Of a DNA stretch of 64,000 bases, positions 4,643 through 42,579 are shown piece by piece. This DNA is from Convolutriloba macropyga (lineage: Eukaryota), in NCBI RefSeq assembly GCF_964194025.1, contig NC_134482.1, positions 1,736,001 through 1,800,000 on the forward strand. Direction: 5' to 3'. The stretch's first letter is position 1. Every line of letters starts with the position of its first letter. Under the pieces are notes generated by a model. That model was not told the origin of the DNA, ran no database searches, and saw only the letters and a program-made list of their open reading frames with translations. The translations under genes and the position numbers were made by a program.

Positions 4643-4748
4643 ATGACGTTTACTGCATTGGCTTTGTTGCTGTGCGTGGTAGACGGAGTGAGCGGCGTTG
4701 TACCCATTTTTGACAGTGGCACTGAACTAATGAAAGTTGGATTTTTCA
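4643..4748 (+). CDS. Actin-like gene, first visible coding exon: MTFTALALLLCVVDGVSGVVPIFDSGTELMKVGFF (signal-peptide-like segment plus phosphate-1 loop)
   Basis: PIFDSGTELMKVGF matches actin LVVDNGSGMCKAGF; GTAAGC donor at 4749; phase 1 fits the next exon. Confidence 0.75.
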
Positions 4749-5150
4749 GTAAGCTATACAACATGTCAATTAGAATGTTTTTTGTTACGATAACGTGTCG
4801 GTTACACAACATTTTGCATGATTAAGTTGAAAGTTCTGAGTTAACAATTTCACTTCACGCCTATAACCTTAAAGCAAAAATACCTTCTTACCGCTCTAAA
4901 AACACCAATTTTAGAACACGGCAAATGTAATGTTCACATAATTCGTCAGCGCAAAAATACTTAATGCCAACAAAGAGCACAAATATCATCTTTAGATTTT
5001 CACGTTTTATGAGGGAATGGAGCGTGGGAGGTCGGAGAAGGGAGGGGTAGCAGTTTCTCAGCAAAATTCGATGATGCAAAATTAGAGCATGACAGAGTTA
5101 ATCTGGAATTGAGTGAGATTGTTCGCTTATGAACCGTCTTAACTTTTCAG

Positions 5151-5308
5151 ATCAACAGAAACCTTCCGCATTTCCTAACGTAGTAGGAGTAATTTCGCCT
5201 GACAATGGGACTTATTTCATTGGAGAAGAGGCCTTAAAGAATCACCAAACTCTGGAACTCCACTACCCTGCTCGCCAAGGACACATACAAAAATCTCATT
5301 ATATGAAG
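5151..5308 (+). CDS. Actin-like gene exon: (N)QQKPSAFPNVVGVISPDNGTYFIGEEALKNHQTLELHYPARQGHIQKSHYMK
   Basis: Matches actin DDAPRAVFPSIVG...[39 protein letters not shown] acceptor and AAG|GT donor. Confidence 0.85.
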
Positions 5309-5718
5309 GTGCGCTTTCGTTTCAATTTTGATAACTTCGTCGTGTTCTTTGAAATTCTTCGAAGTTAAGTTACACATGTCGCTGTTCGTGCAAACGAGCC
5401 GCATGTTTAAGCCAAGATACATAGTTACAGTGACATGTCAGATAGCAGAAGGCGCACTTAGCCAAAAAAAATCGAAAAGTGTCAGATATCCAGACTCGCT
5501 CCTTCTAGCTTAAGTAAGAAATTTGGTTAAGGTTAGGAATTCAGCAGCTCGCATTAATTTGACCACTTCCAAGGAATCGCTGCGTGACACAAGACAGCTC
5601 TGATCAGACCAACTACGGTCGCTAACGTGTGGGGGAGGGGGCTGGTTTTACAGACTCTGGCAGGACTAGATACTGTCTGGAAAGTCTGATCAGAGCATCA
5701 CCCAAAATAGTCTTTTCA

Positions 5719-6090
5719 TAGGCAGCGCCAGAGAAATAGGTGCAAAACACTCTATCGGAATAAGTTTCATTTCATTCGCATTGGACTAATAATTCACGAC
5801 GTTAAATGAACATAAAACAGCAAATCTTGCAAAATTTTTTGACAAGTCCTGGCCTCAGATAGAATACCGAGAAGTTTTTAAAACCTAAAAACTTTAAGCC
5901 TAAAACGAGCGCAATCGATTTAGCATATTAGTAGGCTCGAAAAGAATTATGTTATTTGAATTTTTCTGAGCTTTGTACTAAAAATAGAACAGATGTTATA
6001 TGTATTTGAAATAATAAGGCCTAAGTGGTTAAGAATGACGTAACAAAGCACTCTTGCTGCCAGTACGGCTTTAAATAGGTTGCTCAATTT
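5719..6090 (+). repeat. Dispersed repeat fragment, homologous to 17610-17995
   Basis: Both copies start TAGGCAGCGC...ATAGGTGCAAAACACTCTATCGGAA and align through TTAAATAG.TTGCTCA. Confidence 0.8.
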
Positions 6091-6099
6091 ATATAGGCA

Positions 6100-9000
6100 T
6101 GAAAATCCTCCGGCGCAGATGAAGATGTCGGAAAGATCAGTACGAGCTTAGCAAGTGGTTGGACGAGCGATCCGGATGACGTGCGTACTATTGCGGAGTG
6201 GGCGACGCTGTCGGAACCTTACCGGAGCTGTTCAATTCGAGCACTGGGATAGTAACCCTTTGGTTTGCTTTCATTAACATTTAAAACTAAAGAGACGACC
6301 TTGCGGTACTGCTCTGCAGGCGTCTGCCACTTAGATTTACGGTTCAACGCAGGTACGCACTTCTAAACCCAACGTGCCGAGAATTGGCGTAGGAATGCGC
6401 ACTAGCCTACCGCTTACGATAATCGAACTAGTCAACGACAACGATTGACAGAATTCCGGTTGCTTGCTTACCAAGTCGAAAATGATTGGGTATTACTGCA
6501 CCTAGGTCAAACAGGTATGCACTCAAGGGCGTTAGAGGATGTCCATGAAATGTATCATCAACTAGACAAAAATTAGTGTTCAAAACCTCAGCGGTGAGGC
6601 GACGTATACCAAAGATGGTATGAGATACTCTAAAACTACTGACAAATCTCTCCCAGTTGACAAATTTGTGTGGATCACTGGGCGGATCGAACTTCCAAAT
6701 AATGCTTTATGCACAGATCAGTGACGATGCGTAGCGTGTTCCATTTTTTATGCGTTCACGGAGCCCTTTATGGTCCGAAACAATCAACTCCGATGTTAGT
6801 AAAAAGGAAGAAATTGGTATGCGAGTTTCTTTTTTGGGAGGTCTGCCATGACCGGTTGAAAGGTTGCCGCGTGGAATTTTCTGCACCAGACACAGTTTCG
6901 TTTGTTGAAACGTAGAGAGGAGCGCAGTTTAAGTATGGCGTAGCGTTTCTGTACCATTGACCGTGAATAATCGATGTTCTGAAGATGATTTTTTAAATGA
7001 ATATGCCACAAACACAGGGCGCTCATCCAGCACGATAGGGTCTGTAGTGTCTAAGTATATTTCCACTAGCCGTTGGAGCTGACCAGAAGAACGAATGAGA
7101 CCATGAAGCCAAAGAAATGGAGTAAACTGAGCAATTCGGCTGCTCTTCTCGACAAGAAGATCCTTTCTTGACGAGAAGATACTTCATGGCAAGATCCTTT
7201 CTTGAAGATTCATGACAAGATTGACTTGTTGTCAAGAAGATCGTTTCTTCCGATACTGAAGGACTCCCCTTGAACAAAATACTGAAGCTGACGCGCGTCA
7301 TCGTTAGACTCAACAGAGTTCGTTGGGTTGCCGTCTACGGTACAGTAACATTCGTGGGAGTGTGAAAACCGGAGCATCTATGCGGTAACATTAAGTAGTA
7401 TTTGATAAGAAATGAACTTATCAAATTATATTAGATGAATGCTTTGTTCCTTTATGGGTTTGGTTGCTGATGCGGCTAAAGATGAGATAGAGTCATCAGT
7501 TTGTAACTTGGTTACAACTTCGAGCTTGATGCTATCAAAAATGTCGGTATTTGGCACGAAAGGCAATTGCTCATTTTTCTAGAAGTCAGGACCCCTAACC
7601 CAGATACTTGGTTGCAAAACCTCAGCGGACATACCACGCGTGTTGGCGTCTGCCGGTTTACTCAAAGTGGTGAAGTGGCTTCATTGATCAACGCTAACGT
7701 GTTCCATAATTTCATTTAAGAGATTTGCAATAAAGAGAGGGTGTTTGTTGTTTGAGTTTACTCACGGCAAAAAATTGTACTATCTGACCACATCAAAACT
7801 CTGTCTACAGTGGCGGTCAATGCTCGTCAGATTTCGTTTTTCAAGCCTGCAGCGCGCAGAGCGGCCTACAGATCCAACTTTGGAAAAGCCATCACATTCA
7901 TAGGTGCAATACGGGCCTTGCCCAGGACAAAAGCCAACACCTTTTAAGTCTTTCCGGAAACGCAAGTTATCTCAGCCAGAAGCAAACCTACAGCACTGAT
8001 TACGTCTTGTGAACTATCACCAATCATTTGGAGTTCAAGATATTAGAACATTGCTGACAAATAAACTCTTGATATGGTATCTCTGCCAATTGCGGCAATT
8101 CAACGCACCATGCAAGCAATTCGTCAACTGTTTCTTTGGGCAAAATGTCATCCTAACTTTGTCCATTGACACGCCAAATGTCTTTCAAGATTAAACGAGC
8201 ACCTAAAATAAACGGTGCGACAAAACCAATTAGATAGTAGAGCTCTGACACAAGATTTAAGACCAAGCGCTGTGTTAAATTTTTTGTGATTGTGCTGTTA
8301 GTATCCCTGATTACCACAATAGACCATGAAGCCAAAGAAATGGAGTAAACTGAGCAATTCGGCTGCTCTTCTCGACAAGAAGATCCTTTCTTGACGAGAA
8401 GATACTTCATGGCAAGATCCTTTCTTGAAGATTCATGACAAGATTGACTTGTTGTCAAGAAGATCGTTTCTTCCGATACTGAAGGACTCCCCTTGAACAA
8501 AATACTGAAGCTGACGCGCGTCATCGTTAGACTCAACAGAGTTCGTTGGGTTGCCGTCTACGGTACAGTAACATTCGTGGGAGTGTGAAAACCGGAGCAT
8601 CTATGCGGTAACATTAAGTAGTATTTGATAAGAAATGAACTTATCAAATTATATTAGATGAATGCTTTGTTCCTTTATGGGTTTGGTTGCTGATGCGGCT
8701 AAAGATGAGATAGAGTCATCAGTTTGTAACTTGGTTACAACTTCGAGCTTGATGCTATCAAAAATGTCGGTATTTGGCACGAAAGGCAATTGCTCATTTT
8801 TCTAGAAGTCAGGACCCCTAACCCAGATACTTGGTTGCAAAACCTCAGCGGACATACCACGCGTGTTGGCGTCTGCCGGTTTACTCAAAGTGGTGAAGTG
8901 GCTTCATTGATCAACGCTAACGTGTTCCATAATTTCATTTAAGAGATTTGCAATAAAGAGAGGGTGTTTGTTGTTTGAGTTTACTCACGGCAAAAAATTG

Positions 9001-12000
9001 TACTATCTGACCACATCAAAACTCTGTCTACAGTGGCGGTCAATGCTCGTCAGATTTCGTTTTTCAAGCCTGCAGCGCGCAGAGCGGCCTACAGATCCAA
9101 CTTTGGAAAAGCCATCACATTCATAGGTGCAATACGGGCCTTGCCCAGGACAAAAGCCAACACCTTTTAAGTCTTTCCGGAAACGCAAGTTATCTCAGCC
9201 AGAAGCAAACCTACAGCACTGATTACGTCTTGTGAACTATCACCAATCATTTGGAGTTCAAGATATTAGAACATTGCTGACAAATAAACTCTTGATATGG
9301 TATCTCTGCCAATTGCGGCAATTCAACGCACCATGCAAGCAATTCGTCAACTGTTTCTTTGGGCAAAATGTCATCCTAACTTTGTCCATTGACACGCCAA
9401 ATGTCTTTCAAGATTAAACAAGCACCTAAAATAAACGGTGCGACAAAACCAATTAGATAGTAGAGCTCTGACACAAGATTTAAGACCAAGCGCTGTGTTA
9501 AATTTTTTGTGATTGTGCTGTTAGTATCCCTGATTACCACAATAGTTTCATTGTTAGGATTCCACTTAAAATCAAGCACGTGCATTGATTGCTCTTTGGA
9601 TATAACGATGACTTTTGACTGAGTAGAGTGAAGAGATCCATCAATTCGGTCATCCATTTGTGGCACATCACTTACAAACATAGTAAGCTTGAACTCACTT
9701 AGACGGAGAAGAAGTACCAACTCTTTCAACCTAATGAGGGTCTTTGCAGAGGCTTTCAATAACGGTCAGCATTATCATGTGCCGGGCGCAGTAGCGCTAA
9801 ACTGGCGCAGGTGGGCAAAAATTTTGCCCCAAAAAGTGGCGTGTATACTGATGTACAACAACGTTCGATTTTGATGTACCACAACACCCGCCACAAAAAG
9901 CACAAAAATTGCTGATCACATGTTTCATCTACGACTTGGGGGAACATCCCCCGATGTCGGCTGATACGGCAAATTGGTGTTGTCTGAACCTCAGGAGTAC
10001 CTACACTAGGTTATGTAATTCGGGTCCGGTGAGTGGCGATTTTTTATTTTTTGAGTGATGCGCCCTGGAAATTAACTGCCTCAATTAGAACGCAAAGAAT
10101 TTTGCCCGTTTTGTTTTCATTCACAACCCAATTGTGCGGTGCAGTTTAAACTGAACTAGCGCTGAGAAGTAATTAGGTGATCCGATGTTACCTTCAGCTC
10201 ATAGCGTTCCGACATACTTTATTTTCATAATACATTGAGGATTTTTCAAGAGTATCATAAGCACATGCATCCGCTGTAGATTGTGGGACTGCTTGTTTGC
10301 TTGACTTCATATCGTACAAAGACTTAACTTGACTAGTAAGTTAAAAGTCCTGCTCCATGTTAGCCTTGATGCAAATTGAGACTAAACCTGAAGACGACGG
10401 TGAAGAGCCGCTTAAGACCCAACCTACGCAAAACCGAATAACTATGGGCGATCTTTTTTTGTCTGCAGCAAAGTACTCTAAAGAGCGGAAGTTATGATAA
10501 ACATCCTGTCCAATTATCATATCGATATTTCCATATCAATATGTAGTTGCCCACTAGAAGGTTTAATTTGACTTGCGCCAGCATTCGATACCGCCCTTGG
10601 TGACGTTTGAAGAGAATTTTGATGGTTAAACTTTCTCACTACCATGGGGAAGAGTGTTATGGGAGCTGTTGCAACCATATTTGCAACATTTCTTGGGATT
10701 CGGGCGCTGCCGGAACATATTCTTTTCCCTCAAACATGAAAAGAAAAAATTTCATTCAGCTTCTTTCTCGGCTCGCTGAGCGGGAGACTTTTTTTAAAGA
10801 CCCGACATTCCCAGATGCTCTGGTGACCCTTGCAAACAATGCAGCAAGTTGAAGATAATGTGGCAGTTAGAGCCGGTTTGTATGTGATTTAAGGCTGTGT
10901 TATGGTAACGAATGAGAGATGCTTTGAGAAATTTTTGGTTTTGGTTATTCAGTTGATTGATGTTTGCTTCATCAGTTCCGTCGCCTCTGCCTTCTGTTTC
11001 CATCAACCATTGAAGCTGAGGTGTCTCGTCTTCAATCACAGATGGAAGCAAAATGCAGGGGCGAATGAGCCCAATGCTTTTAGGCCGTGAATAGTGACCA
11101 CGATTCTTGCATATTGGGCGGCAACTTTTGCACTGCTGTGTTCAGGAGCGAAGCGTTCTTCAAGTCAGTCTCGTATCAAATGACATAAAAACCCCGACAA
11201 GACCTGAAACTCTTGCAAAATAGTTTATAATATTGTCAGTTTTGTGCTTATTATTTAGTGTTTGAAAACAGCTGAGTTTGTCTAAGTATGAATTAACAAA
11301 TGTCTGTTGTCGGCCGAATTTATGTTCCCGTGTCTAATGTGCATCCTTATACATCAATTTGTAATAAAAAACTCAGCGATTACCGTCTTTGCTTTTCCAG
11401 TCACTTGTGTTTTTAGGTAGGTCAGCTTGACGTCATCATTCAATGGCTATGAGTCTTTTGCGCTTTCAAACTGCCCAAAATTTTCAAGCCACTGCCGCAG
11501 TTCACCATTGCACTGTGATGATTTACCCTGTGGCAGTGGAATGTACTTTTTCACTAGTGATTGCGTCAGCCTACTGTTTTATAAAATCTGCGGAGTCTGA
11601 AAAAGGGGCCGAAGGTGTGGACTGCGGAGGGCCACCCCAACATAATGGGTGCCGAACAGTAGCTTCATTTGTTAGAGGAACCATAGGAGTGAAAAAATGT
11701 GATGCTCTATAGGCGGAAGAACTAAAAGGATTCGGTTGTATGAAGTCTGATGTTACGTGAGTTTGATACCTTGCTGCTGCAAATACATGATTGGAGCAGC
11801 GAAGCAAAGTAGGGACCTGAGGTTTGTATAACGTTGCCAATGATATGTTGCGTAATTTCACGAATGTACCAACAATGGGAGTGCATTAGTTGGGATTGAT
11901 GCTTAACGACGCCAGATATTTTGACCGACTGGAGCTAGAGCTACGTGGGTTGAGCTGACGAGACTTTCCGGCTGGTACCAAAGATCTGGGGGCCGTGGGT

Positions 12001-13460
12001 GATTTAAGTGGGGTACACATATATTTGCGGGAGTTGAAATGATCTGTGCAGTTGAGGAGGCTGGTATTTGATTGGCATTGTTAGCAACAGGATGATTGAA
12101 GTTTAATGGGAGTACTTGTTGTGAGGGTGGTACGGAACCGACATGAAAAGATGGTGGAATTAACAGAAGTTGCGCAGCTATAAGATTAGAGACCGGGGTT
12201 GAAACGGTGGGAAAATTCATGCGTGCTTGTGGTTGACTAAGTGCTGGCGCAGCATTTCGAAAAGATTTAATGGAGTTGAACGAGGTAGATGACCGGGTTC
12301 AATTATCCGAGCATGCTTGACTTGCGGGCTAAATTTTTGTCTAAATGAATACAATCAAAATGCATGGTAGCCTGACCAAGCCGTCGCGTTGTGTTTGGGG
12401 CGGCTGTTTGTGCTGGCCTGCCAAAAATTACTGGTGGTGATAGAGGTGCATTTTGAGGCCGTTGTTGTTCTTGGATAATGTTAGTTTAGTAGCATTATCA
12501 ATTACAAAAATCTTTTTAATGGTCTCTTCCGGCATTTTGACAGTAAGATTGATGTTCTTATCAACTTTGCTCTGTGCCTTGTTGTCTAAAGGAAGCAAGT
12601 TAAGAAGTTGAACTGAAGAAGCACGAATAGCAGTGGCTTGGTTTGATAAGGCTTTGGAACCAGAAAGGTGAAAACTCAAATCATTTGCAACGATTGCCAT
12701 GTTCGCAGCCGGAGGCTAATTCACCCAACCCTGAACAAGTTCCTTGCTCTAACCGTGTTTCTTTTGGTAAAGGTATCGCGCAATTTTCCTGTGTCGGACT
12801 TGTCAGCTAATGGTTTTTTCATCAACCCAATTTCCTTAAGATCTGCAACAGCTATCGGCTTAAGATGTTCCTCCTCAAGCTGCTGAATATTTAATTCTCG
12901 CAAAGGAACTTGTTGTTCAATTTCAGTGCGCTGTCTGGCAATACTGAGCTCAGTCTTGTGTCGCTTTTTAAATGCCTCCCTTTTTAAGTTTTGGTGATTC
13001 TAATACGCGTTGGTTCTGGCTTGATAAATTTGATGAATTCAAATGCAATACTAATTTTCAATGTTGAGATTTATATTGTTTGTTATCTCTTTGTCTTGGA
13101 CCGAAGCAATGTACCCTCAAACATCAACGGAAATGTCGTCAGATCTCTTGGTTACAGTCCTTAACTTTTGCTCCAGATTTTTACTGGCGACATCTGGATC
13201 ATCTCTATAATGCACAATATCAGAGAGCTCCTTCCTCTTATCAATTGCAATTGTGAAATCATTTTGTAACTTTAAAACTGGAAGTTCGATCCTAACTTTC
13301 CTGTCCTGCTTATCAATAAATATATTAATGTCGCTATAGATTCGTCCTCTTTAAATTTTAAGATTCAGCTATTCAGCTATTAAGAGTCAGTATTAAGTTC
13401 AGCCTCTAATTTTGCCTTGGTAGCGCAAATTTTCTGTATTATTTCCCGCAATTTGGTCAT
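6100..13460 (-). mobile_element. Decayed BEL/Pao LTR retrotransposon (gag-pol with many stops and frameshifts); LTRs not resolved
   Basis: Minus-strand peptides: gag DUF1759-like NDDVKLTYLKTQVTGKAK (~11390-11445); RT AVSADIGGMFPQV...DQQFLCFLWR (~9880-9975); LTQRLVLNLVSELYYLIGFVAPF...LKDIWR; integrase WKFDPPSDPH...WERFV...RRLTAEVL (~6570-6700); C-terminal GSDSVAHSAIVRTSSG...LAKL (~6140-6220). Confidence 0.9.
7098..9545. repeat. Near-identical 1223-bp direct tandem duplication inside the BEL element (7098-8320 and 8321-9543)
   Basis: Identical ORF pairs offset by 1223 (7780/9003, 8009/9232); 2-bp AG microhomology at the junction; one difference noticed (G8197/A9420). Confidence 0.95.
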
Positions 13461-14504
13461 GACATTGTGAAAAATTTAACTCACCGCAAAAGGCGAGCAC
13501 ACACACAAACACAAAACAAAAATGGGTTATTTTGAACCCTAGAGCGACAACTTGCCAGCAAACCGCGAAAACCCAGTTTTTTTTCGAGTACAGAGTACTC
13601 GGCGAAAAGTAGAGAAAAGGCAGTAAGCACAAACGTGTGACACGGGAAAAAAGATGGGGCGGACGAGCATAGACACCAAACGAGCAACGAAAGACGCAAC
13701 GCAAAACGGAACGGACGGAAGAGAATTGACGGTCGAAAGGCACGCGACGAAACGGGTAGCCGGGATAGAACGGACGAGAAGCAGTTAGACACGAGCGAAG
13801 AGGCGTACGTAATTATGCTAGCAGACAACAGCAACGAACTCGATCAAGCAAACTAGCCGTAAATACAAATCAAACTCAAGTCACACCCTAGCGAACACCA
13901 CAACCAGACAGCAAAGCGCATGCTACCGAAAATTAAACCAGCTACAAAATAAAAACTAGCAAACTAGTATTGTTCAAATCGCTCAACAAACCAGCCGTTA
14001 CTACAGGAATAAACGAAATCGCACCTTAAAACGCAGCACGATTTTACAACCAACCACAATATACTAGCAGAAAAAAAACCTCAGCAAACTTACTATATCA
14101 TACCACAGATTCACAGGAAAAAGGAGGACACGACAAGAGCGGAGAGAGGAAAAGACGCAAACGGAATTAAATAAACCAGATGACTTGCAGAAAAAGGACC
14201 GTAGTGAAAAACTAAGAAACATGGAAAGAGCAAAACGGTGAGAGCGGAAGTGCTAATGAAATTGAAGGGGAAGAGTGTGGAGGTTATCTAAGATAAATGC
14301 GCGTCGGTTATAGGACTCAAGTCGCCGATCCTGGTTGGAGATCTGCAATCTACTGGAGTGGACTTCGAGATAGATGACATAAAGAACGAACAGATTGACC
14401 ACCTACGCAATGATCAGTTTGATTGCATCCGCGTCAGCGATGAGTACAAATCCGTTATTTGCTCTGTTTTCAACTCTCTCTGAGTGACAAGGGGTCCAAA
14501 CAAT

Positions 14505-14839
14505 GGTTCTAGGAGAATAGATCGAAAGACAACAGATCGAAAGCAAAAATTGGGACGATAGATCAAAAATTAAATTGTTCAAGTGGCGTATTGGCCAATC
14601 AGATTTGAGCGATCATATCTGATTTATTATACAGATTTATTGTACAGCATATAACATATTCTGTTGTGATATTTTTTTCGGTTGTGATAGATTCAGATTA
14701 AGTCTTATAGGCCGCTAAGGCATGGCCATTGCTCGCGAGGCCTGGCCATAATGTGGTAATTACAATTCAAGTTTTCGATCTATTGTCCCAATTTTTCTGT
14801 TTTCGATCTGCTGTCCTTTCGGTCTACTGTCCGGTCACC
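14505..14839. mobile_element. Non-autonomous Mutator-like (MULE) MITE
   Basis: About 70-bp imperfect TIRs (GGTTCTAGGAGAATAGATCGAAAG... / ...TTTCGGTCTACTGTCCGGTCACC) and a perfect 9-bp TSD CCAAACAAT at 14496-14504 and 14840-14848. Confidence 0.9.
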
Positions 14840-16517: not shown

Positions 16518-16871
16518 ATAGCTTCGGGGTGAATGCGGTGTAGATCATTTTTTGCACCATTTCGGTCGTTTTTAGCTGGTAGTCCTGGTGGTCAAAAGTC
16601 AAGTTTGGGAGGTTTGAGACGGCCTTGTTTTTCAGATGATTGGAAGGTATCAGAATCCGCCTTGTATATATTTGAGTCAATTGTCTGTTATGGTGACTCG
16701 GAATGGACGTATCCATTTTACATCTAAGTGACCACCTTCTCCGTGCATTGTGCAATAAAAAGTGTACTAAATCAATGGATATAGATGGTTTATAAGCTAC
16801 TTCTAGATCAACATTTTGGTTTTCGCTGCTCTCTTACACAGTTGGCTACGCGCTTCCAAACCCGAAGCTAT
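16518..16871. mobile_element. Putative MITE with short TIRs
   Basis: ATAGCTTCGGG at 16518 and its reverse complement CCCGAAGCTAT at 16861-16871; no TSD recognised. Confidence 0.45.
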
Positions 16872-17609
16872 GAATAAAATCATTTCAACAACCGACACTT
16901 CGTGGCACTGTCTGGCCCACCTTGCTGTGGCAATACCGATATGTTAAAGTTGAAATATAATTGTGCAAAATTTGACAAAAGTGCCAGCAGTTGGAAACAA
17001 AATTGAAGTTCAATAACTTCTACATACAGATGAACTTTCTTCTGGAAATTAGTTTGTTTTTTTTTTGTTTGGCGGTTGGTGGGCTTTGAAGGATGCCACT
17101 CACAACTCGCAATGATAAACATATCGATTTTGCTAAAACTGATTAAACTAAAAACACTTGAATATATAGCTACTCCCGCCTAAAAATGCGACAGGAACAA
17201 CTAGTGGACTCAATGACGCGCAATTTCGCAATGTCTCATTTGTCGAGTCACAGTTGCACAATTTCTGACTCATCCGAACTTGTTCGCGCTAAATGGCTCA
17301 GTTTCAACCAAATTCGCACAAAATTGTGCAAATTCCATTCATAATTCAATTATTGTCTCGATTGTCGAGTCATGGCTGTTTTCTGTCTGGATTACGGGGT
17401 TCGTACTTTCACCACCTCACATCGGGATAGATAATATTTACGTTGTATACGCCGGCTTCAGTAACTAAACTCAAATTTGCGTCGCTTCATTAAAATACAC
17501 AGCAACTTTAACAACAGGTGCGCAGGGAAATTTCGAAGAAAGTTTTAAGGGAGAGTAATAATGAAAAAACACAATTGTAGATGGGTCTCTTTTGGGGCGC
17601 CAAAAAATT

Positions 17610-18545: not shown

Positions 18546-18772
18546 GTTGTTGAAAAGATCCATTGTCGATTTCTACAAGAGACAAAGAAACATGTCAAAA
18601 AATTTTGTGTTCTGCACTTCCATTTTATACTCTTTGCCAAAATATCGATTTTGCGAAGATTAGATGTTTAATCTGAGCTTGCGTGTGACGAAAAAAGAGA
18701 CAAAATTAAAATTGCGTAAGAATAGGCAATTAAATCACAATTATTATTGCGTTAGTACTAACATTTCAGTAT

Positions 18773-19847: not shown

Positions 19848-19908
19848 ATTATGTGGAAACAATGGATACATGAGGAAAAGCAAAGAGACTCGACGGCATT
19901 GGATCTTG
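19848..19908 (+). CDS. Actin-like gene small exon: IMWKQWIHEEKQRDSTALDL
   Basis: TTTAG acceptor with phase-0 start continues ...HYMK|IMWKQW, like actin DMEKIWHHTF; G|GTAGTC donor in phase 1. Confidence 0.6.
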
Positions 19909-33377: not shown

Positions 33378-33907
33378 ATACATTTGCCTCTATATTATCT
33401 TCATTTTTAAAATATTTTTTTTTCTGCCTGAATACCCAGTGTGAGATATCCCCGTATAACACTGAAAAGTAGTAAGTGCTTAGTATTTCTGCTCAGAACT
33501 TATGTTTTTGAAAGATCTGAAAAGATAGAACTGAAATTTCGACAACAGTAAGATGTTCGGGAATTATTTCAGAATGATAAAATTAAATACTACTCGAATT
33601 ACGCTATTGCACCATTTTAAATTGCATTTCAACTACAACTATCAAGCTCAGTAACATTTTCTATGGCTATTAAAGGAACCAGAACATAGTTCATTCATAG
33701 TGAACAAAACATAAGCCGCACTCTTTTATATATGAAATTAGTTGCTTGTTGTTGGCAATGCTATTGAGCAAAAAAGGTGTATTGATGCCCTCCCAGGTTT
33801 CACCAAAAAAACGAGAAAAGAAAGGAAAGCGTGTAAAAAAATAACTTTTCACCCATATTTCTCCTCTTAGTGCTTATCAGATAAGTCTCTTATAAGTCTC
33901 TTTAATT

Positions 33908-36900
33908 AAAACAAATGAAGCGTAGGTTTTCGTCGGTTTCAAAATTTAAGAGGAGTTAGTTTTCGTAGGTTTTAAAATGTAAAAAGCGTCGGTTTTCATC
34001 GGTTTTGAACGTAAGAAGCGTCGGTTTTCGTCGGTTTCAAAATATAAGAAGCGCTGGTTTTTGTAGGTTTCAAAACGTAAGAAGCGTCGGTTTTCGTCGG
34101 TTTCCAAAAGTAAGAAGCGTTGGTTTTCGTAGGTTTCAAAACGTAGGAAGCATCGGTTTTCGTCGGTTTTAAACGTAAGGAGCGTCGGTTTTCGTCGGTT
34201 TCAAAATGTAAGAAGCGCTGGTTTTCGTAGGTTTCAAAACCTAAGAAGCGTCGGTTTTCATCGATTTTAAACCTATGAAGCGTCGGTTTTAAACGTAACA
34301 AGCGTTGGTTTTTCCTGGGTTTCAAAATGTAAGAAGTTTTGATTTTCGTAGGTTTCAAAACGTATGAAGCATCGGTTTTCGTCGCTTTTAAACGTAAGAA
34401 GCGTCGGTTTTCGTCGGTTTCAAAATGTAAGAAGCTTTGATTTTCGTAGATTTCAAAACGTATGAAGCGTCGGTTTTCGTCGGTTTCAAAATGTAAGAAG
34501 CGTTGGTTTTCGTATGTTTCAAAACGTAAGAAGCGTTGATTTTTGTAGTTTTCAAAACGTATGAAGCATCGGTTTTCGTCGCTTTTAAACGTAAGAAGTG
34601 CTGGTTTTCGTAGGTTGCAAAACGTAAGAAGCGTCGGTTTCCATCGATTTTAAACGTAAGAAGCGTCGTTTTTCGTCGGTTTCAAAATGTAAGAAGCTTT
34701 GGTTTTCGTAGATTTCAAAACATATGAAGCGTCCGTTTTCGTCGGTTTTAAACGTATGAAGCGTCGGTTTTTGTCGGCTTCAAAATATAAGAGGCCCTGG
34801 TTCTCGTAGATTTCAAAACGTATGAAGCGTCGGTTTTCGTCGGTTTCAAAATGTAAGAAGCGCTGGTTTTCGTAGGTTTCAAAACGTAGGAAGCGTCGGT
34901 TTTCATCGATTTTAAACCTATGAAGCGTCGGTTTTAAACGTAACAAGCGTTGGTTTTTCCTGGGTTTCAAAATGTAAGAAGTTTTGATTTTCGTAGGTTT
35001 CAAAACGTATGAAGCATCGGTTTTCGTCGCTTTTAAACGTAAGAAGCGTCGGTTTTCGTCGGTTTTAAACGTAAGGAGCGTCGGTTTTCGTCGGTTTGAA
35101 AATGTAAGAAGCGCTGGTTTGCGTAGGTTTCAAAACCTAAGAAGCGTCGGTTTTCATCGATTTTAAACCTATGAAGCGTCGGTTTTAAACGTAACAAGCG
35201 TTGGTTTTTCCTGGGTTTCAAAATGTAAGAAGTTTTGATTTTCGTAGGTTTCAAAACGTATGAAGCATCGGTTTTCGTCGCTTTTAAACGTAAGAAGCGT
35301 CGGTTTTCGTCGGTTTCAAAATGTAAGAAGCTTTGATTTTCGTAGATTTCAAAACGTATGAAGTGTCGGTTTTCGTCGGTTTCAAAATGTAAGAAGCGTT
35401 GGTTTTCGTATGTTTCAAAACGTAAGAAGCGTTGATTTTTGTAGTTTTCAAAACGTATGAAGCATCGGTTTTCGTCGCTTTTAAACGTAAGAAGCGCTGG
35501 TTTTTGTAGGTTTCAAAACGTAAGAAGCGTCGATTTTCATCGGTTTTAAACTTAAGAGGCGTCGGTTTATGTCGGTTTCAAAATGTAAGGTGCGCTGGTT
35601 TTCGTAGGTTGCAAAACGTAAGAAGCGTCGGTTTCCATCGATTTTAAACTTAAGAAGCGTCGTTTTTTGTCGGTTTCAAAATGTAAGAAGCTTTGGTTTT
35701 CGTAGATTTCAAAACGTATGAAGCGTCCGTTTTCGTCGGTTTTAAACGTATGAGGCGTCGGTTTTTGTCGGCTTCAAAATGTAAGAGGCCCTGGTTCTCG
35801 TAGATTTCAAAACGTATGAAGCGTCGGTTTTCGTCGGTTTCAAAATGTAAGAAGCGCTGGTTTTTGTAGGTTTCATAACCTAAGAAGCGTCGGTTTTCAT
35901 CGATTTTAAACGTATGAAGCGTCGGTTTTAAATGTAACAAGCGTCGGTTTTCCTCGGTTTCAAAATGTAAGAAGCGTTGGTTTTCGTAGGTTTCAAAACG
36001 TAAGAAGCGTCGGTTTTCGTCGGTTTTAAACGTAAGGCGCGTCGGTTTTTGTCGGTTTCAAAATGTAAGAAGCGTTGGTTTTCGTATGTTTCAAAAAGTA
36101 AGAAGCGTTGATTTTTGTAGTTTTCAAAACGTATGAAGCATCGGTTTTCGTCGCTTTTAAACGTAAGAAGCGCTGGTTTTTGTAGGTTTCAAAACGTAAG
36201 AAGCATCGGTTTTCATCGGTTTTAAACTTAAGAGGCGTCGGTTTATGTCGGTTTCAAAATGTAAGATGCGCTGGTTTTCGTAGGTTTCAAAACGTAAGAA
36301 GCGTCGGTTTCCATTGATTTTAAACGTAAGAAGCGTCGTTTTTCGTCGGTTTCAAAATGTAAGAAGCTTCGGTTTTCGTAGAATTCAAAACGTATGAAAC
36401 GTCGGTTTTCGTCAGGTTTAAACGTAGGAAGCGTCGGTTTTTGTCGGCTTCAAAATGTAAGAGGCCTTGGTTCTCGTAGATTTCAAAACGTATGAAGCGT
36501 CGGTTTTCGTCGGATTCAAAATAAAAGAAGCGCTGGTTTTCGTAGGTTTCAAAACCTAAGAAGCCTCGGTTTTCATTGATTTTAAACGTATGAAGCGTCA
36601 GTTTTAAACGTAACAAGCGTCGGTTTTCCTCAGTTTCAAAATGTAAGAAGTGTTGATTTTCGTAGGTTTCAAAACGTATGAAGCATCGGTTTTCGTCGCT
36701 TTTAAACGTAAGAAGCGTCGGTTTTCGTCGGTTTCAAAATGTAGGAAGCTTTGGTTTTCGTATGTTTCAAAACGTAAGAAGCGTCGGTTTTCGTCGGTTT
36801 TAAACGTAAGAAGCGTTGGTTTTTGTCTGTTTCAAAATATAAGAAGCGTTCGTTTTCGTAGGTTTCAAAACGTAAGAAGCGTCGGTTTTCGTCGGTTTTA

Positions 36901-39680
36901 AACGTAAGGAGCGTCGGTTTTCGTCGGTTTCAAAATGTAAGAAGCGTTGAATTTAGTATGTTTCAAAACATAAGAAGCGTTGATTTTTGTAGGTTTCAAA
37001 ACGTAAGAAGCATCGGTTTTCATCGGTTTTAAACGTAAGAGGCGTCGGTTTATGTCGGTTTCAAAAAGTAAGATGCGCTGGTTTTCGTAGGTTTCAAAAC
37101 GTAAGAAGCGTCGGTTTCCATCAATTTTAAACGTAAGAAGCGTCGTTTTTCGTCGGTTTCAAAATGTAAGAAGCTTTGGTTTTCGTAGATTTCAAAAAGT
37201 ATGAAGCGTCGGTTTTCGTCGGTTTTAAACGTAAGAAGCGTCGGTTTTTGTCGGCTTCAAAATGTAAGAAGCCTTGGTTCTCGTAGATCTCAAAACGTAT
37301 GAAGCGTCGGTTTTCGTCGGTTTCAAAATGGAAGAAGCGCTGGTTTTCGTAGGTTTCAAAACCTAAGAAGCGTCGGTTTTCATCGATTTTAAACGTATGA
37401 AGCGTCGGTTTTAAAAAGTAACAAGCGTCGGTTTTCCTCGGTTTTAAAATGTAAGAAGTGTTGATTTTCGTAGGTTTCAAAACGTAAGAAGCATTGGTTT
37501 TCGTCGCTTTTAAACGTAAGAAGCGTCAGTTTTCGTCGGTTTCAAAATGTAAGAAGCTTTGGTTTTCGTAAGTTTCAAAACGTAAGAAGCGTCGGTTTTC
37601 GTCGGTTTTAAACGTAAGAAGCGTCGGTTTTCGTCTGTTTCAAAATATAAGAAGCGTTAGTTTTTGTAGGTTTCAAAACGTAAGAAGCGTCGGTTTTCGT
37701 CGGTTTTAAACGTAAGGAGCGTCGGTTTTCGTCGGTTTCAAAATGTAAGAAGCGCTGGTTTTTGTAGGTTTCAAAACCTAAGAAGCGTCGGTTTTCATCG
37801 ATTTTAAACGTTAGAAGCGTCGGTTTTTGTCGGTTTCAAATTGTAAGAAGCTTTGGTTTTCGTAGGTTTCAAAACGTATGAAGCACCGGTTTTATACGTA
37901 AGAAGCGTCGGTTTTCGTTGGTTTCAAAATGTAAGAAGATTTGGTTTTCATAGGTTTTAAACGTAAGAGGCGTCGGTTTATGTCGGTTTCAAAAAGTAAG
38001 ATGCGCTGGTTTTCGTAGGTTTCAAAACGTAAGAAGCGTCGGTTTCCATCAATTTTAAACGTAAGAAGCGTCGTTTTTCGTCGGTTTCAAAATGTAAGAA
38101 GCTTTGGTTTTCGTAGATTTCAAAAAGTATGAAGCGTCGGTTTTCGTCGGTTTTAAACGTAAGAAGCGTCGGTTTTTGTCGGCTTCAAAATGTAAGAAGC
38201 CTTGGTTCTCGTAGATCTCAAAACGTATGAAGCGTCGGTTTTCGTCGGTTTCAAAATGTAAGAAGCGCTGGTTTTCGTAGGTTTCAAAACCTAAGAAGCG
38301 TCGGTTTTCATCGATTTTAAACGTATGAAGCGTCGGTTTTAAAAAGTAACAAGCGTCGGTTTTCCTCGGTTTTAAAATGTAAGAAGTGTTGATTTTCGTA
38401 GGTTTCAAAACGTAAGAAGCATTGGTTTTCGTCGCTTTTAAACGTAAGAAGCGTCAGTTTTCGTCGGTTTCAAAATGTAAGAAGCTTTGGTTTTCGTAAG
38501 TTTCAAAACGTAAGAAGCGTCGGTTTTCGTCGGTTTTAAACGTAAGAAGCGTCGGTTTTCGTCTGTTTCAAAATATAAGAAGCGTTCGTTTTTGTAGGTT
38601 TCAAAACGTAAGAAGCGTCGGTTTTCGTCGGTTTTAAACGTAAGGAGCGTCGGTTTTCGTCGGTTTCAAAATGTAAGAAGCGCTGGTTTTTGTAGGTTTC
38701 AAAACCTAAGAAGCGTCGGTTTTCATCGATTTTAAACGTTAGAAGCGTCGGTTTTTGTCGGTTTCAAATTGTAAGAAGCTTTGGTTTTCGTAGGTTTCAA
38801 AACGTATGAAGCACCGGTTTTATACGTAAGAAGCGTCGGTTTTCGTTGGTTTCAAAATGTAAGAAGATTCGGTTTTCATCGGTTTCAAAACGTAAGAAGC
38901 GTCGGTTTTCGTCGGTTTCAAAATGTAAAAAGCGTCGGTTTTCGTCGGTTTCAAAATGTAAGAAGCTTTGGTTTTTGTAGTATTCAAAACGTAAGAGACG
39001 TCGGTTTTCGTTGGTTTTAACGTAAGAAGCCTCGGTTTTTGTCGGTTTCAAAATAAAAGAAGCCTTGCTTTTCGTAGGTTTCAAAACGTATGAAGTGTTG
39101 GTTTTCGTCGGTTTTAAACGTAGGAAGCGTCGGTTTTCGTCTGTTTCAAAATATAAGAAGCGTTGGTTTTCGCAGGTTTCAAAACGTAAGAAGCACCGGT
39201 TTTAAACGTAAGGAGCGTCGGTTTTTGTCGGTTTCAAAATAAAAGAAGCGTTGCTTTTCGTAGGTTTCAAAACGTAAGAAGCGTTGGTTTTCGTCGGCTT
39301 TAAACGTAAGAAGCGTCGGTTTTCGTCGGTTTCAAAATTAAAGAAGCCTTGCTTTTCGTAGGTTTCAAAATGTAAGAAGCGTCGGTCTTCGTCGGTTTTA
39401 ACCGTAAGAAGCCTCGGTTTTCGTCAGTTTCAAAATAAAAGAAGCCTTGCGTTTCATAGGTTTCAAAACGTAAGAAGCGTCGGTTTTTGTCGGTTTTAAT
39501 CGTAAGAAGCGTCGGTTTTTGTCTGTTTCAAAATATAAGAAGCGTTGATTTTCGTAGGTTTCAAAACGTAAGAAGCGTCGGTTTTCGTCGGTTTTAAACG
39601 TAAGGAGCGTCGGTTTTTGTCGGTTTCAAATTGTAAGAAGCGTTGATTTTCGTAGGTTTCAAAACGTACGAAGCGTCGAA
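33908..39680. repeat. Tandem satellite, 33-bp (with 32-bp variant) monomer, about 5.8 kb, with higher-order structure
   Basis: Consensus AAAACGTAAGAAGCGTCGGTTTTCGTCGGTTTC; 11-aa periodicity in spurious ORFs; near-identical blocks offset by 928 bp. Confidence 0.97.
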
Positions 39681-40084
39681 TGTCGTCCACTAGTGGCAGA
39701 ATGGTATAGAATAAGACATATTTAATATATTGGTGTAAATTACAACCCAAATTACACTCTTTGCAAAAAGTGAAAGCAATCGATCATTATCTTGAGCATA
39801 TGTTCAGAAAGCATACATCAATGCAACGTCTTAAATTTCGTGCTGATGTATACATCATAATCTCAAGTTATCTGATTTTTGTTTCATGACGCAGATGAAG
39901 ATGTTACAAAACAAATTTTTTTTCTTCAAAACTAAAAAAAATTTTTTTATTAAAAACTTTATATAAATAGTTTATTGGATTTGTTTTTACGATGATTTGT
40001 TATCAACTGCAATAATTTTTCTTGAAAGTTGTAATCCGTTTCAAAAATTGGTGACTTCTAGAATTCATTAATGCCCCAGGCTGA

Positions 40085-40429
40085 GGTTCCAGAATGAAAG
40101 TCGATATGTCTAGACCGAAATGAACGCACGAAGGGGTCGTCGTGCGTTCAAAATTACACGGTCTGGAAACACGGATGAACGCACGATGGTCCGGACTTGG
40201 ACGCACCAAAACTTTGGTTTTGGAACGCACGAATTTGATTTGGAGCGCACGATGGTCTGGACAAGAACGCACGAAAGTCTGGACTATATACGCTTTTGGT
40301 CTGGGATGGTCTGGACATATTCGACTTAACGCACGAAGAACGCAATGAAAGTTTTGAACGCGCGATAGTCTGAACATAGGCACTTTCCGTCTCGGACGGT
40401 CTGGACATATCGACTTTCGGTCCGGCACC
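40085..40429. mobile_element. MITE with about 33-bp TIRs and internal GGTCTGGA/AACGCACGA repeats (GG...CC ends, MULE-like)
   Basis: GGTTCCAGAATGAAAGTCGATATGTCTAGACCG vs the reverse complement of CGGTCTGGACATATCGACTTTCGGTCCGGCACC; no TSD seen. Confidence 0.7.
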
Positions 40430-40497
40430 TCTGTGTTCTTTTTCATCATGCAAAATTACCAGCTGCACCTTGAAATTTTAGTTTGGTTATTCTTCAG

Positions 40498-40540
40498 ACA
40501 GTCACCATGAAGTGGTGAATTTTCAACCCACATATTTTGT
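40498..40540 (+). CDS. Candidate actin-like micro-exon: (D)SHHEVVNFQPTYF; 3' boundary uncertain
   Basis: TTCTTCAG acceptor; start phase fits the previous exon; HEVVNFQP resembles actin HPVLLTEAP. The donor phase does not directly match the exon at 42349. Confidence 0.45.
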
Positions 40541-40734
40541 GTAAATTTCTCTGGGCAGTGAAACTATGAAAGATTTCAATTAAGATCAAAACTCACGAGC
40601 GAAGAACTTTCACCCAAGATTTTCACCGCACTCACTACATTCAAAGCTAGAATTACAGAACTCAAGATGACTGTCCAAAGCGAATTCAGACAAATTCATG
40701 CGGCGAATTGAAGTAAGATGTCCTCCCTAGTCGA

Positions 40735-41960
40735 GAAATCTTCGGTTTGTAAACATAGAAATCGTCGGTATCGTCGATTTTTCTGGCCAAAAGTGACCAA
40801 ATTGTCTTGATTTTTTGTCGGTATCATCGCTTTTGTTCGGTATAGCATAAAAAGGAATCGGTATCGTTGTTTTTAGACGTAAGCGAATTTCTCTATCGTC
40901 AATTTGAAAACATAAGAAAGTTTCGGTATAGTCGTTTGAAAAAGTAAGAGTTATTCGGTATCGTCCTTATTCAAACATAAAAAAAATTTTGGTCTCGTCG
41001 TTTTAAAACGTAAGAGAAATTGGAAATCGTCGTTTTTTAACGCAAAAGAGATTCGGTATCGTCGCTTGTAAACGCAGATTATCGGCATCGTCATTTTCTT
41101 GAATGATGTTGATAATTTGAAATATCGTCGGAAAATTATCTGAAGTTGATTTGAGAAAAACCAACTTTTGAGATTTACCTCTGCTTTCTGGTGATGTTTC
41201 CCTCCTTCTTTCTCATCTGGAACGGGGACTGGCTACGTGCGGTGGAGTTACCAACAAACAGTCATGAAACAAAAAACAAACAGCTATGAAACAAACAGAA
41301 ATGAGTCCGAGCAAAGGGTATAAAACGCCCCCTAAAACTCTCTCCAAACTATTTTGTACCGAATATATGCTCAAACATCTTTCTCTCGCTCTTTGATAAA
41401 CATGCATAATTAGACACATACATACCATAAGTGCAAACATACATATATACATTCATACATATATACTTATATACACCCATACATACATACACACATCCAT
41501 TTACTTTTTCCTCCATTTTATAAGACTGCTAGTACTACTTTATAAAAATTTTTTAAAAAAACGATGTTGAACACATTTTTTTCATAATGATTTATATCGG
41601 GACATTTTCACCTCGGATCTTATTTTCTTTAAAAATAATCCCTAACAACATACCGAAATTTTCCTACGCTGATAATCCATCATACCTACTATTTCCTACA
41701 TATGCAATTGATGCCGAACGTTTCTTACTTCCATTAACCCAACATACCGAATCTGGCTTAACAGAACATACCAAATATTTCTTAAGTTCCAGACCGAATA
41801 TACCGAATGTGGCAAAACCAAAAATACCGAAGCTTTCTTTTGTTGCAGACCAAACATACCGACGATTTCTTACGTTTGTAACCGAACAAACAGAACAAGC
41901 CTAACATACCGACAATTTTTTTAACGTGGAAAACTAAACATACCGAACATTTGATGCGTC
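40735..41960. repeat. Two degenerate arrays of ~30-35-bp units in opposite orientation (40735-41130 and 41648-41960), related to the satellite monomer
   Basis: Left array: AAACGTAAGA.A..TCGGTATCGTCG; right array: AACATACCGA...TTCTTACGTTT (reverse complement). Confidence 0.65.
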
Positions 41961-42348
41961 GTTTTTGTTTGGTCTTCTGGACTACGGATCCACTAAATAT
42001 CCATTAATATTTTATTAAACCTACGTGCGATACACGAGCTCGGACTGTTCTCGAAGTCAAAATCGGGACTGAACCTTAATTTTTTATTTCTGTATTCTTA
42101 CTCTGATCAGTACTTTGATCATGTCATATTGAATACTTTTCATTATAAAACAGAAAAAAATAAACATTTACTGATTTTAATCTGGGTCATTGTAAATTTG
42201 CAGCATGAAAATAGTAAAAGTACGTTCTGAAAATGAGCTGCAATAATCCGAAACAACCCACGATTCGGGCTTTAAAACAGGGTTCACATCGGCTAACTAC
42301 GACCCAAACTGATTTCAGAGCGTTTCAAATTTATTTTTTCTGTTTCAG

Positions 42349-42579
42349 CCGACCCCTATCAAACATACATTGTAGAAGAAATATGGAAAACCCTGGGCTT
42401 CAGCGAGGTTTTTCTTGAAAATACAGCTGAGATGACAATGGTACATTCTCAAGAAAAAAACAAAACTGGCCTTGTGATCGAATCGGGTGCCGGGGCTACA
42501 TTTGTAGTGGCTATCCACAATGGAAACGAATATAAACTCGCTACAAGATTTATGCTTGTGGCCGGAATTGCAATAACTG
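42349..42579 (+). CDS. Actin-like gene exon: DPYQTYIVEEIWKTLGFSEVFLENTAEMTMVHSQEKNKTGLVIESGAGATFVVAIHNGNEYKLATRFMLVAGIAIT
   Basis: Aligns to actin [66 protein letters not shown] (phosphate-2 loop); polypyrimidine TTTCAG acceptor and G|GTAGGT donor. Confidence 0.85.

What the first reader, a model, noticed from the sequence alone, without database searches (positions are those of the whole stretch)
4643..42579. Divergent actin-fold protein with an apparent secretory signal peptide
Seen in sequence: the spliced exons give MTFTALALLLCVVDGVSG-VVPIFDSGTELMKVGFFNQQKPSAFPNVVG...FIGEEAL...LHYPARQG...MKIMW...TGLVIESGAGATFVVAIHNG...VAGIAIT, colinear with roughly actin residues 7-186. An 18-aa leader with a hydrophobic core (ALALLLCVV) and a small-residue V-S-G cleavage site sits directly before the first actin strand, and NGT and NKT sequons are present. 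Established: actins and Arps are cytosolic or nuclear and lack signal peptides. Inference: this may be an ER-targeted or secreted actin-like protein, possibly a lineage-specific family. Caveat: an acceptor-like TTCCAG at ~4599/4606 and an open frame upstream of the ATG mean the true start could lie further 5'.
Basis: partly seen in the sequence, partly recalled or inferred. Interest (0 to 1): 0.82.

Follow-up and report, generated by a model that had tools for sequence, protein, structure and literature searches.

The report
Actin-derived gene family with signal-peptide-like leaders
This window of the acoel worm Convolutriloba macropyga holds the front half of one fast-evolving member of a family of at least seven, probably eleven, actin-derived genes that all start with a hydrophobic, signal-peptide-like leader, which would matter because no actin-family protein is known to enter the secretory pathway.

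Summary
Four GT-AG exons (4643-4748, 5151-5308, 19848-19908, 42349-42579, + strand) give a stop-free 185-codon reading that is colinear with actin residues ~7-186. An 18-20 residue hydrophobic leader sits directly before strand beta1.

The genome is the acoel Convolutriloba macropyga.

**Leader across the family.** I could read exon 1 in seven paralogs, and all seven carry a poorly conserved but uniformly hydrophobic leader of 20-32 residues. Four more loci match the leader+beta1 profile end to end. Nine conventional actins and Arps of the same genome have none. One paralog is an NCBI model (352 aa), with an in-frame stop 12 nt upstream of its ATG. In its AlphaFold2 model the leader is unstructured and lies outside a confident actin fold.

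**Other family traits.** The family derives from conventional actin and shares its first intron position. It lacks actin's last ~30 residues and has replaced the hydrolysis residues Q137 and H161.

**Open points.** Secretory targeting is inferred only: no RNA data, no SignalP, no proteomics. The window copy has a shifted exon-3 donor and a very long branch, although its reading frame was clearly kept by selection. It shows no C-terminal exon in 84 kb of assembled sequence. That exon is expected about where an assembly gap lies (44035-44234).

The parts
4590..4606 (+). Two acceptor-like sites (tttcttccag| and tttccag|) 37-44 nt upstream of the ATG; possible 5'UTR intron acceptor
   Evidence: Read directly. 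A similar pyrimidine-AG site lies 2-30 nt upstream of the ATG in most paralogs.
4643..4748 (+). Exon 1. The leader MTFTALALLLCVVDGVSG(VV) is 4643-4696/4702. It is followed by strand beta1 and the phosphate-1 loop (PIFDSGTELMKVGFF). The donor is G|GTAAGC in phase 1.
   Evidence: The intron position and phase match the paralogs and the conventional actin genes of this genome.
5151..5308 (+). Exon 2 (NQQKPSAFPNVVG...FIGEEAL...LHYPARQGHIQKSHYMK); D-loop shortened by 7 residues
   Evidence: Pfam Actin E 4e-4; 40% identical to paralog A exon 2 with the same exon end.
19848..19908 (+). Exon 3 (IMWKQWIHEEKQRDSTALDL). The donor TTG|GTAGTC lies 21 nt upstream of the ancestral donor position; reading through gives ...GSPEN then a stop.
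33917..39678 (.). 5.8-kb satellite (33-bp unit, ~179 copies) inside the 22.4-kb intron 3
   Evidence: strong GC skew.
42349..42579 (+). Exon 4 (ADPYQTYIVEEIWKTLGF...NKTGLVIESGAGATFVVAIHNG...VAGIAIT + G), with the phosphate-2 loop as ESGAGAT. The donor is G|GTAGGT in phase 1.
   Evidence: Pfam Actin E 4.3e-5; 47% identical to paralog A.
42791..42940 (+). Candidate exon 5. It has a good acceptor (ttctgttttacag|), is open for 150 nt and has the same phases as paralog A exon 5 (153 nt). The weak donor T|GTTGAT overlaps the stop at 42943-42945. It has no sequence similarity to the family's exon 5.
   Evidence: the length and phase comparison with L035:5391-5543 is. Status is inferred, not shown.
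44035..44234 (.). Assembly gap (200 N), 1.1 kb after candidate exon 5. This is about where the family's conserved last exon would be expected (the paralog A intron 5 is 1.3 kb).

Best explanation
The window carries one member of an acoel (Convolutriloba macropyga) family of actin-derived genes.

Origin: the family arose from an intron-containing conventional actin gene. Exon 1 was extended at its 5' end, so the protein begins with 20-32 residues that have the properties of a cleavable ER signal peptide. These are a short uncharged n-region, 9-19 apolar residues, and a polar stretch ending in small residues directly before strand beta1.

Other family changes: the proteins have lost actin's last ~30 residues (the helices of the subdomain-1 target-binding cleft). 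They have replaced the ATP-hydrolysis residues (Q137 to T, H161 to F, D154 to E). The window and paralog-A clade has also lost 7 residues of the D-loop.

Most likely mechanism (inferred): the products are co-translationally translocated into the ER. They then act as soluble, non-cytoskeletal actin-fold proteins in the secretory pathway or outside the cell, not as filament-forming actin.

The window copy is the fastest-evolving member. Its first four exons (and probably a fifth) have been kept open by selection. Its conserved last exon is missing from the assembled sequence and is expected about where a 200-N assembly gap lies. The copy is therefore either incompletely assembled or recently truncated.
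For: Exons, splice sites and open frame.

Organism and NCBI model: P0014, 'actin-6-like', 352 aa, starts MIPVTIFVFTCFAFAHVSVQE|TIVIDSG.

Leader in 7 of 7 readable exon 1s:
- window
- L031:223-337
- L024:1062-1179
- L043:1426-1549
- L048:1411-1552
- L050:1501-1612
- L051:1495-1605(-)
.

Four further loci match the leader+beta1 profile end to end, while conventional actins match only the beta1 part.

Hydropathy (best 9-residue Kyte-Doolittle mean) is 2.4-3.3 in the family against -0.8 to 0.3 in nine control actins/Arps.

The leader sequence is not conserved and its length varies, but its hydrophobicity is kept, as in signal peptides.

The C9 paralog has an in-frame TAA 12 nt upstream of its ATG.

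AlphaFold2 of P0014: pLDDT 80.6, pTM 0.80, with residues 1-20 at pLDDT ~25 and unstructured.

Best solved relatives are all conventional actins, residues 21-347 against actin 6-343; Pfam Actin 221 bits.

The first intron has the same position and phase as in conventional actin genes of this genome.

All family C-termini stop 3-11 residues after SAW[IL]GA. A contiguous (apparently intron-free) 1,063-bp contig from a JGI sample (3300019136) encodes a 44%-identical member with the same short C-terminus.

The window ORF was kept by selection: it is sister to paralog A with a branch of 1.62 against 0.31, and neutral drift would give 5-8 stops.
Against: - No trained signal-peptide predictor could be run.
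- No RNA runs of this species are served, so the transcription start, the exon joins and the window's start codon are unverified.
- The window's frame is open for 28 codons upstream of the ATG and contains acceptor-like sites.
- There are no proteomic data.
- Family members have few or no N-glycosylation sequons, no conserved cysteine pattern and no KDEL.
- The n-regions lack the usual basic residue in most copies.
- For the window copy, the ancestral exon-3 donor is lost, candidate exon 5 has no family similarity, and the best-conserved last exon is absent from the window and the next 20 kb on both strands.
Confidence: 0.55

Rival explanations
1. The leader is an uncleaved N-terminal membrane anchor (signal-anchor or reverse signal-anchor). 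It would tether an actin-like domain to the ER or another membrane, possibly on the cytosolic face as in microsomal P450s, rather than being a cleaved secretory signal.
For: Some leaders have long apolar stretches (C8b 19 residues, C9 16) that run straight into the hydrophobic strand beta1. Most lack a basic n-region. A cytosolic orientation would keep the domain in the compartment where actin folds. No sequons or disulfide pattern were gained.
Against: Most apolar cores are 9-15 residues (window 9-11), which is short for a bilayer span. They are followed by polar stretches with small residues (VSG, GSG, SVQ, STQ). There is no basic cluster after the hydrophobic core, as reverse signal-anchors usually have.
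Confidence: 0.15
2. The window locus is a dying or dead copy: a 5' half-gene left by truncation. In that case its leader says nothing about a functional product, whatever the intact paralogs do.
For: No family C-terminal exon was found in 84 kb. The ancestral exon-3 donor is lost and a weak donor 21 nt upstream must be used, deleting the conserved (Y/E)(S/A)PL motif. The branch is five times longer than its sister's. The introns are 14.5 and 22.4 kb and filled with repeats and a satellite. Candidate exon 5 has no family similarity and a weak donor. No annotated full-length product was retrieved, only ORF-caller fragments P0002 and P0026.
Against: 185 codons across four exons are free of stops and frameshifts despite 61% divergence from the nearest paralog; a neutral simulation gives P < 0.003. 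All splice sites are usable. The phosphate-1 and phosphate-2 loops are kept. The missing exon is expected at about the position of the assembly gap.
Confidence: 0.3
3. The start codon is mis-called. Upstream coding exons join at the acceptor-like sites, so the hydrophobic stretch is an internal segment of a larger protein.
For: The window frame is open from 4559, with TTCCAG sites at 4599 and 4606. Similar acceptor-like sites precede the ATG in most paralogs.
Against: In the C9 paralog an in-frame TAA lies between the acceptor-like site and the ATG, and the NCBI model starts at that ATG. In all seven copies an ATG sits immediately before the hydrophobic stretch, and in the window it is the first in-frame ATG after the upstream stop. 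The profile hits at four more loci also begin at the Met.
Confidence: 0.07
4. The leader is a structural element that packs onto subdomain 1 in place of the lost C-terminal helices. On this reading the protein is cytosolic.
For: Actin's N- and C-termini both lie in subdomain 1. The family gained the leader and lost the last ~30 residues.
Against: In AlphaFold2 residues 1-20 have pLDDT ~25 with no secondary structure or packing. The leader has no conserved positions and its length varies from 20 to 32 residues, which is unlike a packed helix.
Confidence: 0.03

Closest known systems
Conventional actin (Pfam PF00022; e.g. PDB 4efh, cytoplasmic beta/gamma actin)
   Same: Best sequence relatives (E 4e-69 for paralog P0014). 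Same fold in the AlphaFold2 model. Same first intron position and phase as actin genes of this genome. The phosphate-1 loop is D-x-G-S/T-x-x-x-K-x-G and the phosphate-2 loop is recognisable.
   Different: N-terminal hydrophobic leader instead of the acidic N-terminus. The last ~30 residues are missing. Q137 to T, H161 to F, D154 to E, and N12 to S in most copies. The D-loop is 7 residues shorter in the window/paralog-A clade. Only 25-38% identical to actin over the N-terminal half.
Lineage-specific divergent actin duplicates and Arps (e.g. mammalian ACTL7/ACTRT, Drosophila Arp53D/Arp2D, Arp1-Arp10)
   Same: Actin-fold duplicates that diverged fast in one lineage. Drosophila Arp2D appears among the few database hits.
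   Different: By established knowledge those proteins are cytosolic or nuclear and have no hydrophobic leader. This family is closer to actin than to any Arp class and forms its own multi-copy clade in one acoel genome.
Actin-like (ASKHA) ATPase-fold proteins that work in the secretory pathway: BiP/GRP78 (Hsp70) and ecto-NTPDases (GDA1/CD39)
   Same: Works-like analogy from established knowledge: the same superfold can function in the ER lumen or outside the cell when it is preceded by a signal peptide or anchor.
   Different: Different families with no family-level sequence relation to actin; not tested here. The acoel proteins are bona fide Pfam Actin members that have lost actin's hydrolysis residues.

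Membership tests
Actin family (Pfam PF00022) | Match to the Actin profile above the gathering score (27 bits) | tested here: inconclusive
   Window exons score 19.5 bits (e2) and 22.7 bits (e4) separately, each below the cut-off but colinear. The spliced product could not be submitted. Paralog P0014 scores 221 bits.
Actin family (Pfam PF00022) | Strand beta1 followed by the phosphate-1 loop (DxG[ST]xxxKxG) | tested here: met
   Window has IFDSGTELMKVGF against actin VVDNGSGMCKAGF, with no gaps.
Actin family (Pfam PF00022) | Phosphate-2 loop (DSGDGV in actin) | tested here: met
   Window has ESGAGAT; the family has ESG/ETG. The motif is recognisable, but D154 to E, D157 is lost and H161 is F.
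Actin family (Pfam PF00022) | C-terminal half: subdomains 3/4 with the adenosine-binding region (VLSGGTT..., ...WIGGS) | tested here: not met
   Absent from the window and the next 20 kb with tblastn, a generic actin HMM and a family HMM. Present in the paralogs as VLGGGN...SAWIGAS. An assembly gap lies about where it is expected.
Actin family (Pfam PF00022) | Catalytic residues for ATP hydrolysis (Q137, H161) | tested here: not met
   T and F in the window copy and the five other family members aligned across this region. The role of these residues comes from established actin biochemistry.
Eukaryotic cleavable ER signal peptide | Apolar h-region of about 7-15 residues within the first ~25 residues | tested here: met
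   Window ALALLLCVV (9; 11 with FT). Family best 9-residue hydropathy is 2.4-3.3 against at most 0.3 in nine controls.
Eukaryotic cleavable ER signal peptide | Small uncharged residues at -3/-1 after a polar c-region | tested here: met
   Window V-S-G|V and paralog A G-S-G|T fit the rule. In the other leaders only a polar stretch after the apolar core was seen. This is a rule-of-thumb reading only.
Eukaryotic cleavable ER signal peptide | Located at the true N-terminus of the translated protein | tested here: inconclusive
   Shown for the C9 paralog (in-frame stop upstream, NCBI model). The window frame is open upstream and no RNA data exist.
Eukaryotic cleavable ER signal peptide | Positive call by a trained predictor, and experimental cleavage or secretion | not testable with these tools
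   SignalP and DeepTMHMM are not available; there are no proteomic data.
Established Arp classes (Arp1-Arp10) | Closer to one Arp class than to conventional actin | tested here: not met
   The 60 best solved relatives of P0014 are all conventional actins. In the tree the family is not nested in the genome's Arps (small sample).

The most novel reading that the evidence does not exclude
Acoels have evolved the first actin-family proteins that function inside the secretory pathway or outside the cell. One possibility is that they are structural or polymerising cargo of gland-cell granules or extrusomes (rhabdoids, or the needle of sagittocysts, whose composition is unknown to me). The rapid divergence of copies such as the window's would then reflect an extracellular, possibly defensive or prey-directed role.
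Probability: 0.1. Interest if true: 0.9.

Novelty: new variant of a known kind. Interest (0 to 1): 0.66.

Why it matters
Actin and its relatives are the textbook example of cytosolic and nuclear proteins. A multi-copy family that keeps the actin fold, gains a signal-peptide-like leader, drops the hydrolysis residues and loses the C-terminal cleft helices would show the fold being recruited to a new compartment. It would also give a concrete, testable set of genes in an animal lineage (Acoela) whose secretory cell types are poorly understood at the molecular level.

I found no precedent in the paper library. The only database entries were one NCBI model named 'actin-6-like' and one environmental (JGI) contig. 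The leader has therefore apparently gone unremarked.

Tried and rejected
1. phmmer of exon 4 against 1.8 billion representatives returned only spurious repeat proteins and a 68-aa ORF-caller fragment of the window itself.

2. RNA evidence: both run searches (window e1-e2, and a compact paralog as control) returned only genomic runs from one study. Expression and splice joins could not be tested, and read laying was not used.

3. C-terminal half: tblastn with actin and paralog exons, a generic actin HMM and a family HMM found nothing in the window or the next 20 kb. A weak match at 57913-57981 (11 of 23 identities) was rejected because no GGGN/ER/SAW motif follows in any frame and the region is repeat-rich.

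4. Leader as a replacement for the lost C-terminal helices: not supported by AlphaFold2.

5. Sequons as evidence for secretion: rejected, since they are not conserved and the family has 0-1 per protein.

6. Old pseudogene: rejected by the neutral-drift simulation. Recent truncation remains possible.

7. Word-indexed protein searches with P0014 and a family alignment found only P0014, one JGI contig and unrelated actins/Arps. The look-up of encoding contigs had no record for P0014.

8. A first fragment alignment (A3) misplaced the exon-1 pieces and was replaced by A4.

Four further exon-1 hits are therefore known only as profile matches.

10. The spliced window protein was not submitted to any tool, because it has no reference.

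Full report
**What is in the window**

The window is G000:C16:1736001-1800000 of a 1.176-Gb animal genome. It is Convolutriloba macropyga, an acoel. A paralog is 99% identical to the NCBI protein 'actin-6-like [Convolutriloba macropyga]' (P0014), and the assembly size equals that of the published genome note (PMC13650328).

I read every boundary:
- e1 4643-4748, donor A|GTAAGC, phase 1
- e2 5151-5308
- e3 19848-19908
- e4 42349-42579, phase 1

All have AG acceptors and GT donors, and the spliced reading has 185 codons without a stop.

Pfam Actin hits e2 (E 4e-4, profile 28-74) and e4 (E 4.3e-5, profile 120-180). IFDSGTELMKVGF aligns without gaps to actin's VVDNGSGMCKAGF, so MTFTALALLLCVVDGVSGVV is an extra N-terminal segment placed before strand beta1.

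**The leader is a family property**

A six-frame Pfam search of the whole genome shows conventional actins, Arps and a set of divergent actin-like loci. About ten of these are 36-47% identical to the window's exon 4.

I found exon 1 of six paralogs. Each begins with an ATG followed by a hydrophobic stretch and then beta1:
- paralog A on C16: MLICEFFVLVWVGVGVRVGSG|TVVIVDSG
- C8b: MISTFSLCIASIFSLIGLSCQNA|VVVIDSG
- C8a: MNSFLTFSLIIIFASLWQPSSTQLD|VVVFDGG
- C2: MTCAKFELVIVWFLFSVATNFQTGFPASEDD|LVVIDSG
- C9 (the NCBI model P0014): MIPVTIFVFTCFAFAHVSVQE|TIVIDSG
- C12c: MSSFLFSFVGFLSLGHLSVQK|TVVIDCG

A profile of the seven exon 1s matches four more loci from its first positions to the end. Conventional actins and Arps match only its beta1 part; I could not fetch those four loci.

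The best 9-residue hydropathy is 2.4-3.3 in the seven leaders. It is -0.8 to 0.3 in nine control actin-family N-termini of the same genome. Leader sequence and length are not conserved, but hydrophobicity and the polar, small-residue end are. This is the pattern expected of signal peptides.

**Is the ATG the start?**

In the C9 paralog an in-frame TAA lies 12 nt upstream of the ATG, and the NCBI model starts there.

In the window the ATG is the first one in a frame that is open from 4559. Homology with the other six argues against it.

No RNA runs of this species are served; both searches returned only genomic runs of one study.

**What the family is**

P0014 is closest to conventional actins, not Arps. 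Residues 21-347 align to actin 6-343 at E 4e-69, and Pfam Actin scores 221 bits.

The first intron sits at the same codon and phase as in intron-containing actin genes of this genome (GCT G|GTAAGT).

I assembled full models for paralog A (350 aa), C8b (343 aa) and C2 (364 aa). All family C-termini end 3-11 residues after SAW[IL]GA, so actin's last ~30 residues are missing.

Across the six members aligned through this region (including the N-terminally truncated contig product P0017), the positions of Q137 and H161 are T and F, and D154 is E. The window and paralog-A clade lacks 7 D-loop residues.

AlphaFold2 of P0014 gives a confident actin fold (pLDDT 80.6, pTM 0.80). Residues 1-20 have pLDDT ~25 and are unstructured. 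The leader is therefore not modelled as part of the fold, and the idea that it replaces the lost C-terminal helices finds no support.

Outside this genome I found one member. It is a contiguous (apparently intron-free) 1,063-bp contig from a JGI sample, 44% identical, with its N-terminus cut off and the same short C-terminus.

I found no paper describing such proteins.

**State of the window copy**

It is sister to paralog A (support 0.96), but its branch is 1.62 substitutions per site against 0.31.

In a simulation, neutral drift from a paralog-A-like sequence to 60% identity already gives about 5 stops (P(no stop) = 0.0025). Drift to the observed ~40% gives 7-8 stops. The open frame was therefore kept by selection for most of that divergence.

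Three features are irregular:
- **Shifted e3 donor.** The ancestral e3 donor is gone. Reading on gives GSPEN and a stop, where paralogs have YSPL followed by the donor. The only frame-keeping donor is a weak GTAGTC 21 nt upstream, and using it removes the conserved SPL motif.
- **Candidate e5 without family similarity.** After e4 a good acceptor opens a 150-nt frame (42791-42940). It has the same phases as paralog A's 153-nt e5 and is within one codon of its length. It has no family similarity and a weak donor overlapping the stop.
- **Missing last exon.** The family's best-conserved last exon (FQAPE...VLGGGN...SAWIGAS) is absent from the window and the next 20 kb on both strands. I checked with tblastn, a generic actin HMM and a family HMM.

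In paralog A the last exon lies 1.3 kb after e5. In the window that distance falls about at the 200-N gap at 44035-44234.

The copy is therefore either incompletely assembled or recently truncated. The two readings cannot be told apart here.

**Verdict**

Secretory targeting is the best-supported reading of a conserved, non-fold, hydrophobic N-terminal leader, but it is an inference without RNA, predictor or protein data. A membrane-anchor reading is the main rival.

The window copy alone would be weak evidence because it lacks a C-terminal half. The family-level pattern is what makes the finding interesting.

Noticed in passing
window 33917-39678: 5.8-kb satellite array (33-bp unit, about 179 copies; also a 98-bp higher-order period) with strong GC skew, inside intron 3 of the actin-like gene.
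   Followed up: partly
window 198-1094 and 1136-2410 (+): Two adjacent long ORFs (298 and 424 aa) whose translations contain family-B DNA-polymerase-like motifs (..SQLYPFS....NSSYGYQ....EMDTDSLY..). This suggests a Polinton/Maverick-type element relic, but Pfam gave no hit at E <= 0.01, so this is my reading of the motifs only.
   Followed up: partly
window 8153-8536 and 9376-9759 (-): Two 127-aa ORFs 1.2 kb apart share a near-identical ~55-residue C-terminal part (..VVIRDTNSTITKNLTQRLVLNLVSELYYLIGFVAPFILGA..). This looks like a repeated element inside intron 2; no Pfam hit for the one tested.
   Followed up: no
G000:C16:1870382-1874378 (-) and 1895223-1912170 (+) (L032/L036 vs L031/L035): The nearest paralog exists as an inverted pair of near-identical copies about 35 kb apart, 90-130 kb downstream of the window. 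Exon 1 of the minus-strand copy was not found by the searches.
   Followed up: partly
G000:C16:1403234-1403539 (L028), C3167:8211-8507 (L030), C1960:12365-12760: Family-type last exons with no other family exon detected nearby. Two of them are on unplaced scaffolds. They could be orphan fragments or parts of genes split by the assembly.
   Followed up: no
upstream of the ATG in window (4590-4606), L031:~207-214, L024:~1052-1060, L043, L050: A pyrimidine-rich AG acceptor-like site lies 2-45 nt upstream of the start codon in most family members. This suggests a conserved 5'UTR intron (or another form of 5' processing). It could not be tested without RNA.
   Followed up: no
L051:1495-1605 (-) (G000:C12:13467052-13467162): Exon 1 of this paralog ends with G|GCAAGT, a likely GC-AG intron at the position where the other copies have GT donors.
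   Followed up: no
L052 (JGI sample 3300019136, contig Ga0193112_1042177): A contiguous, apparently intron-free 1,063-bp contig encodes a 317-aa, N-terminally truncated family member (44% identical to P0014). This may mean the family is transcribed in some other organism in an environmental sample.
   Followed up: partly
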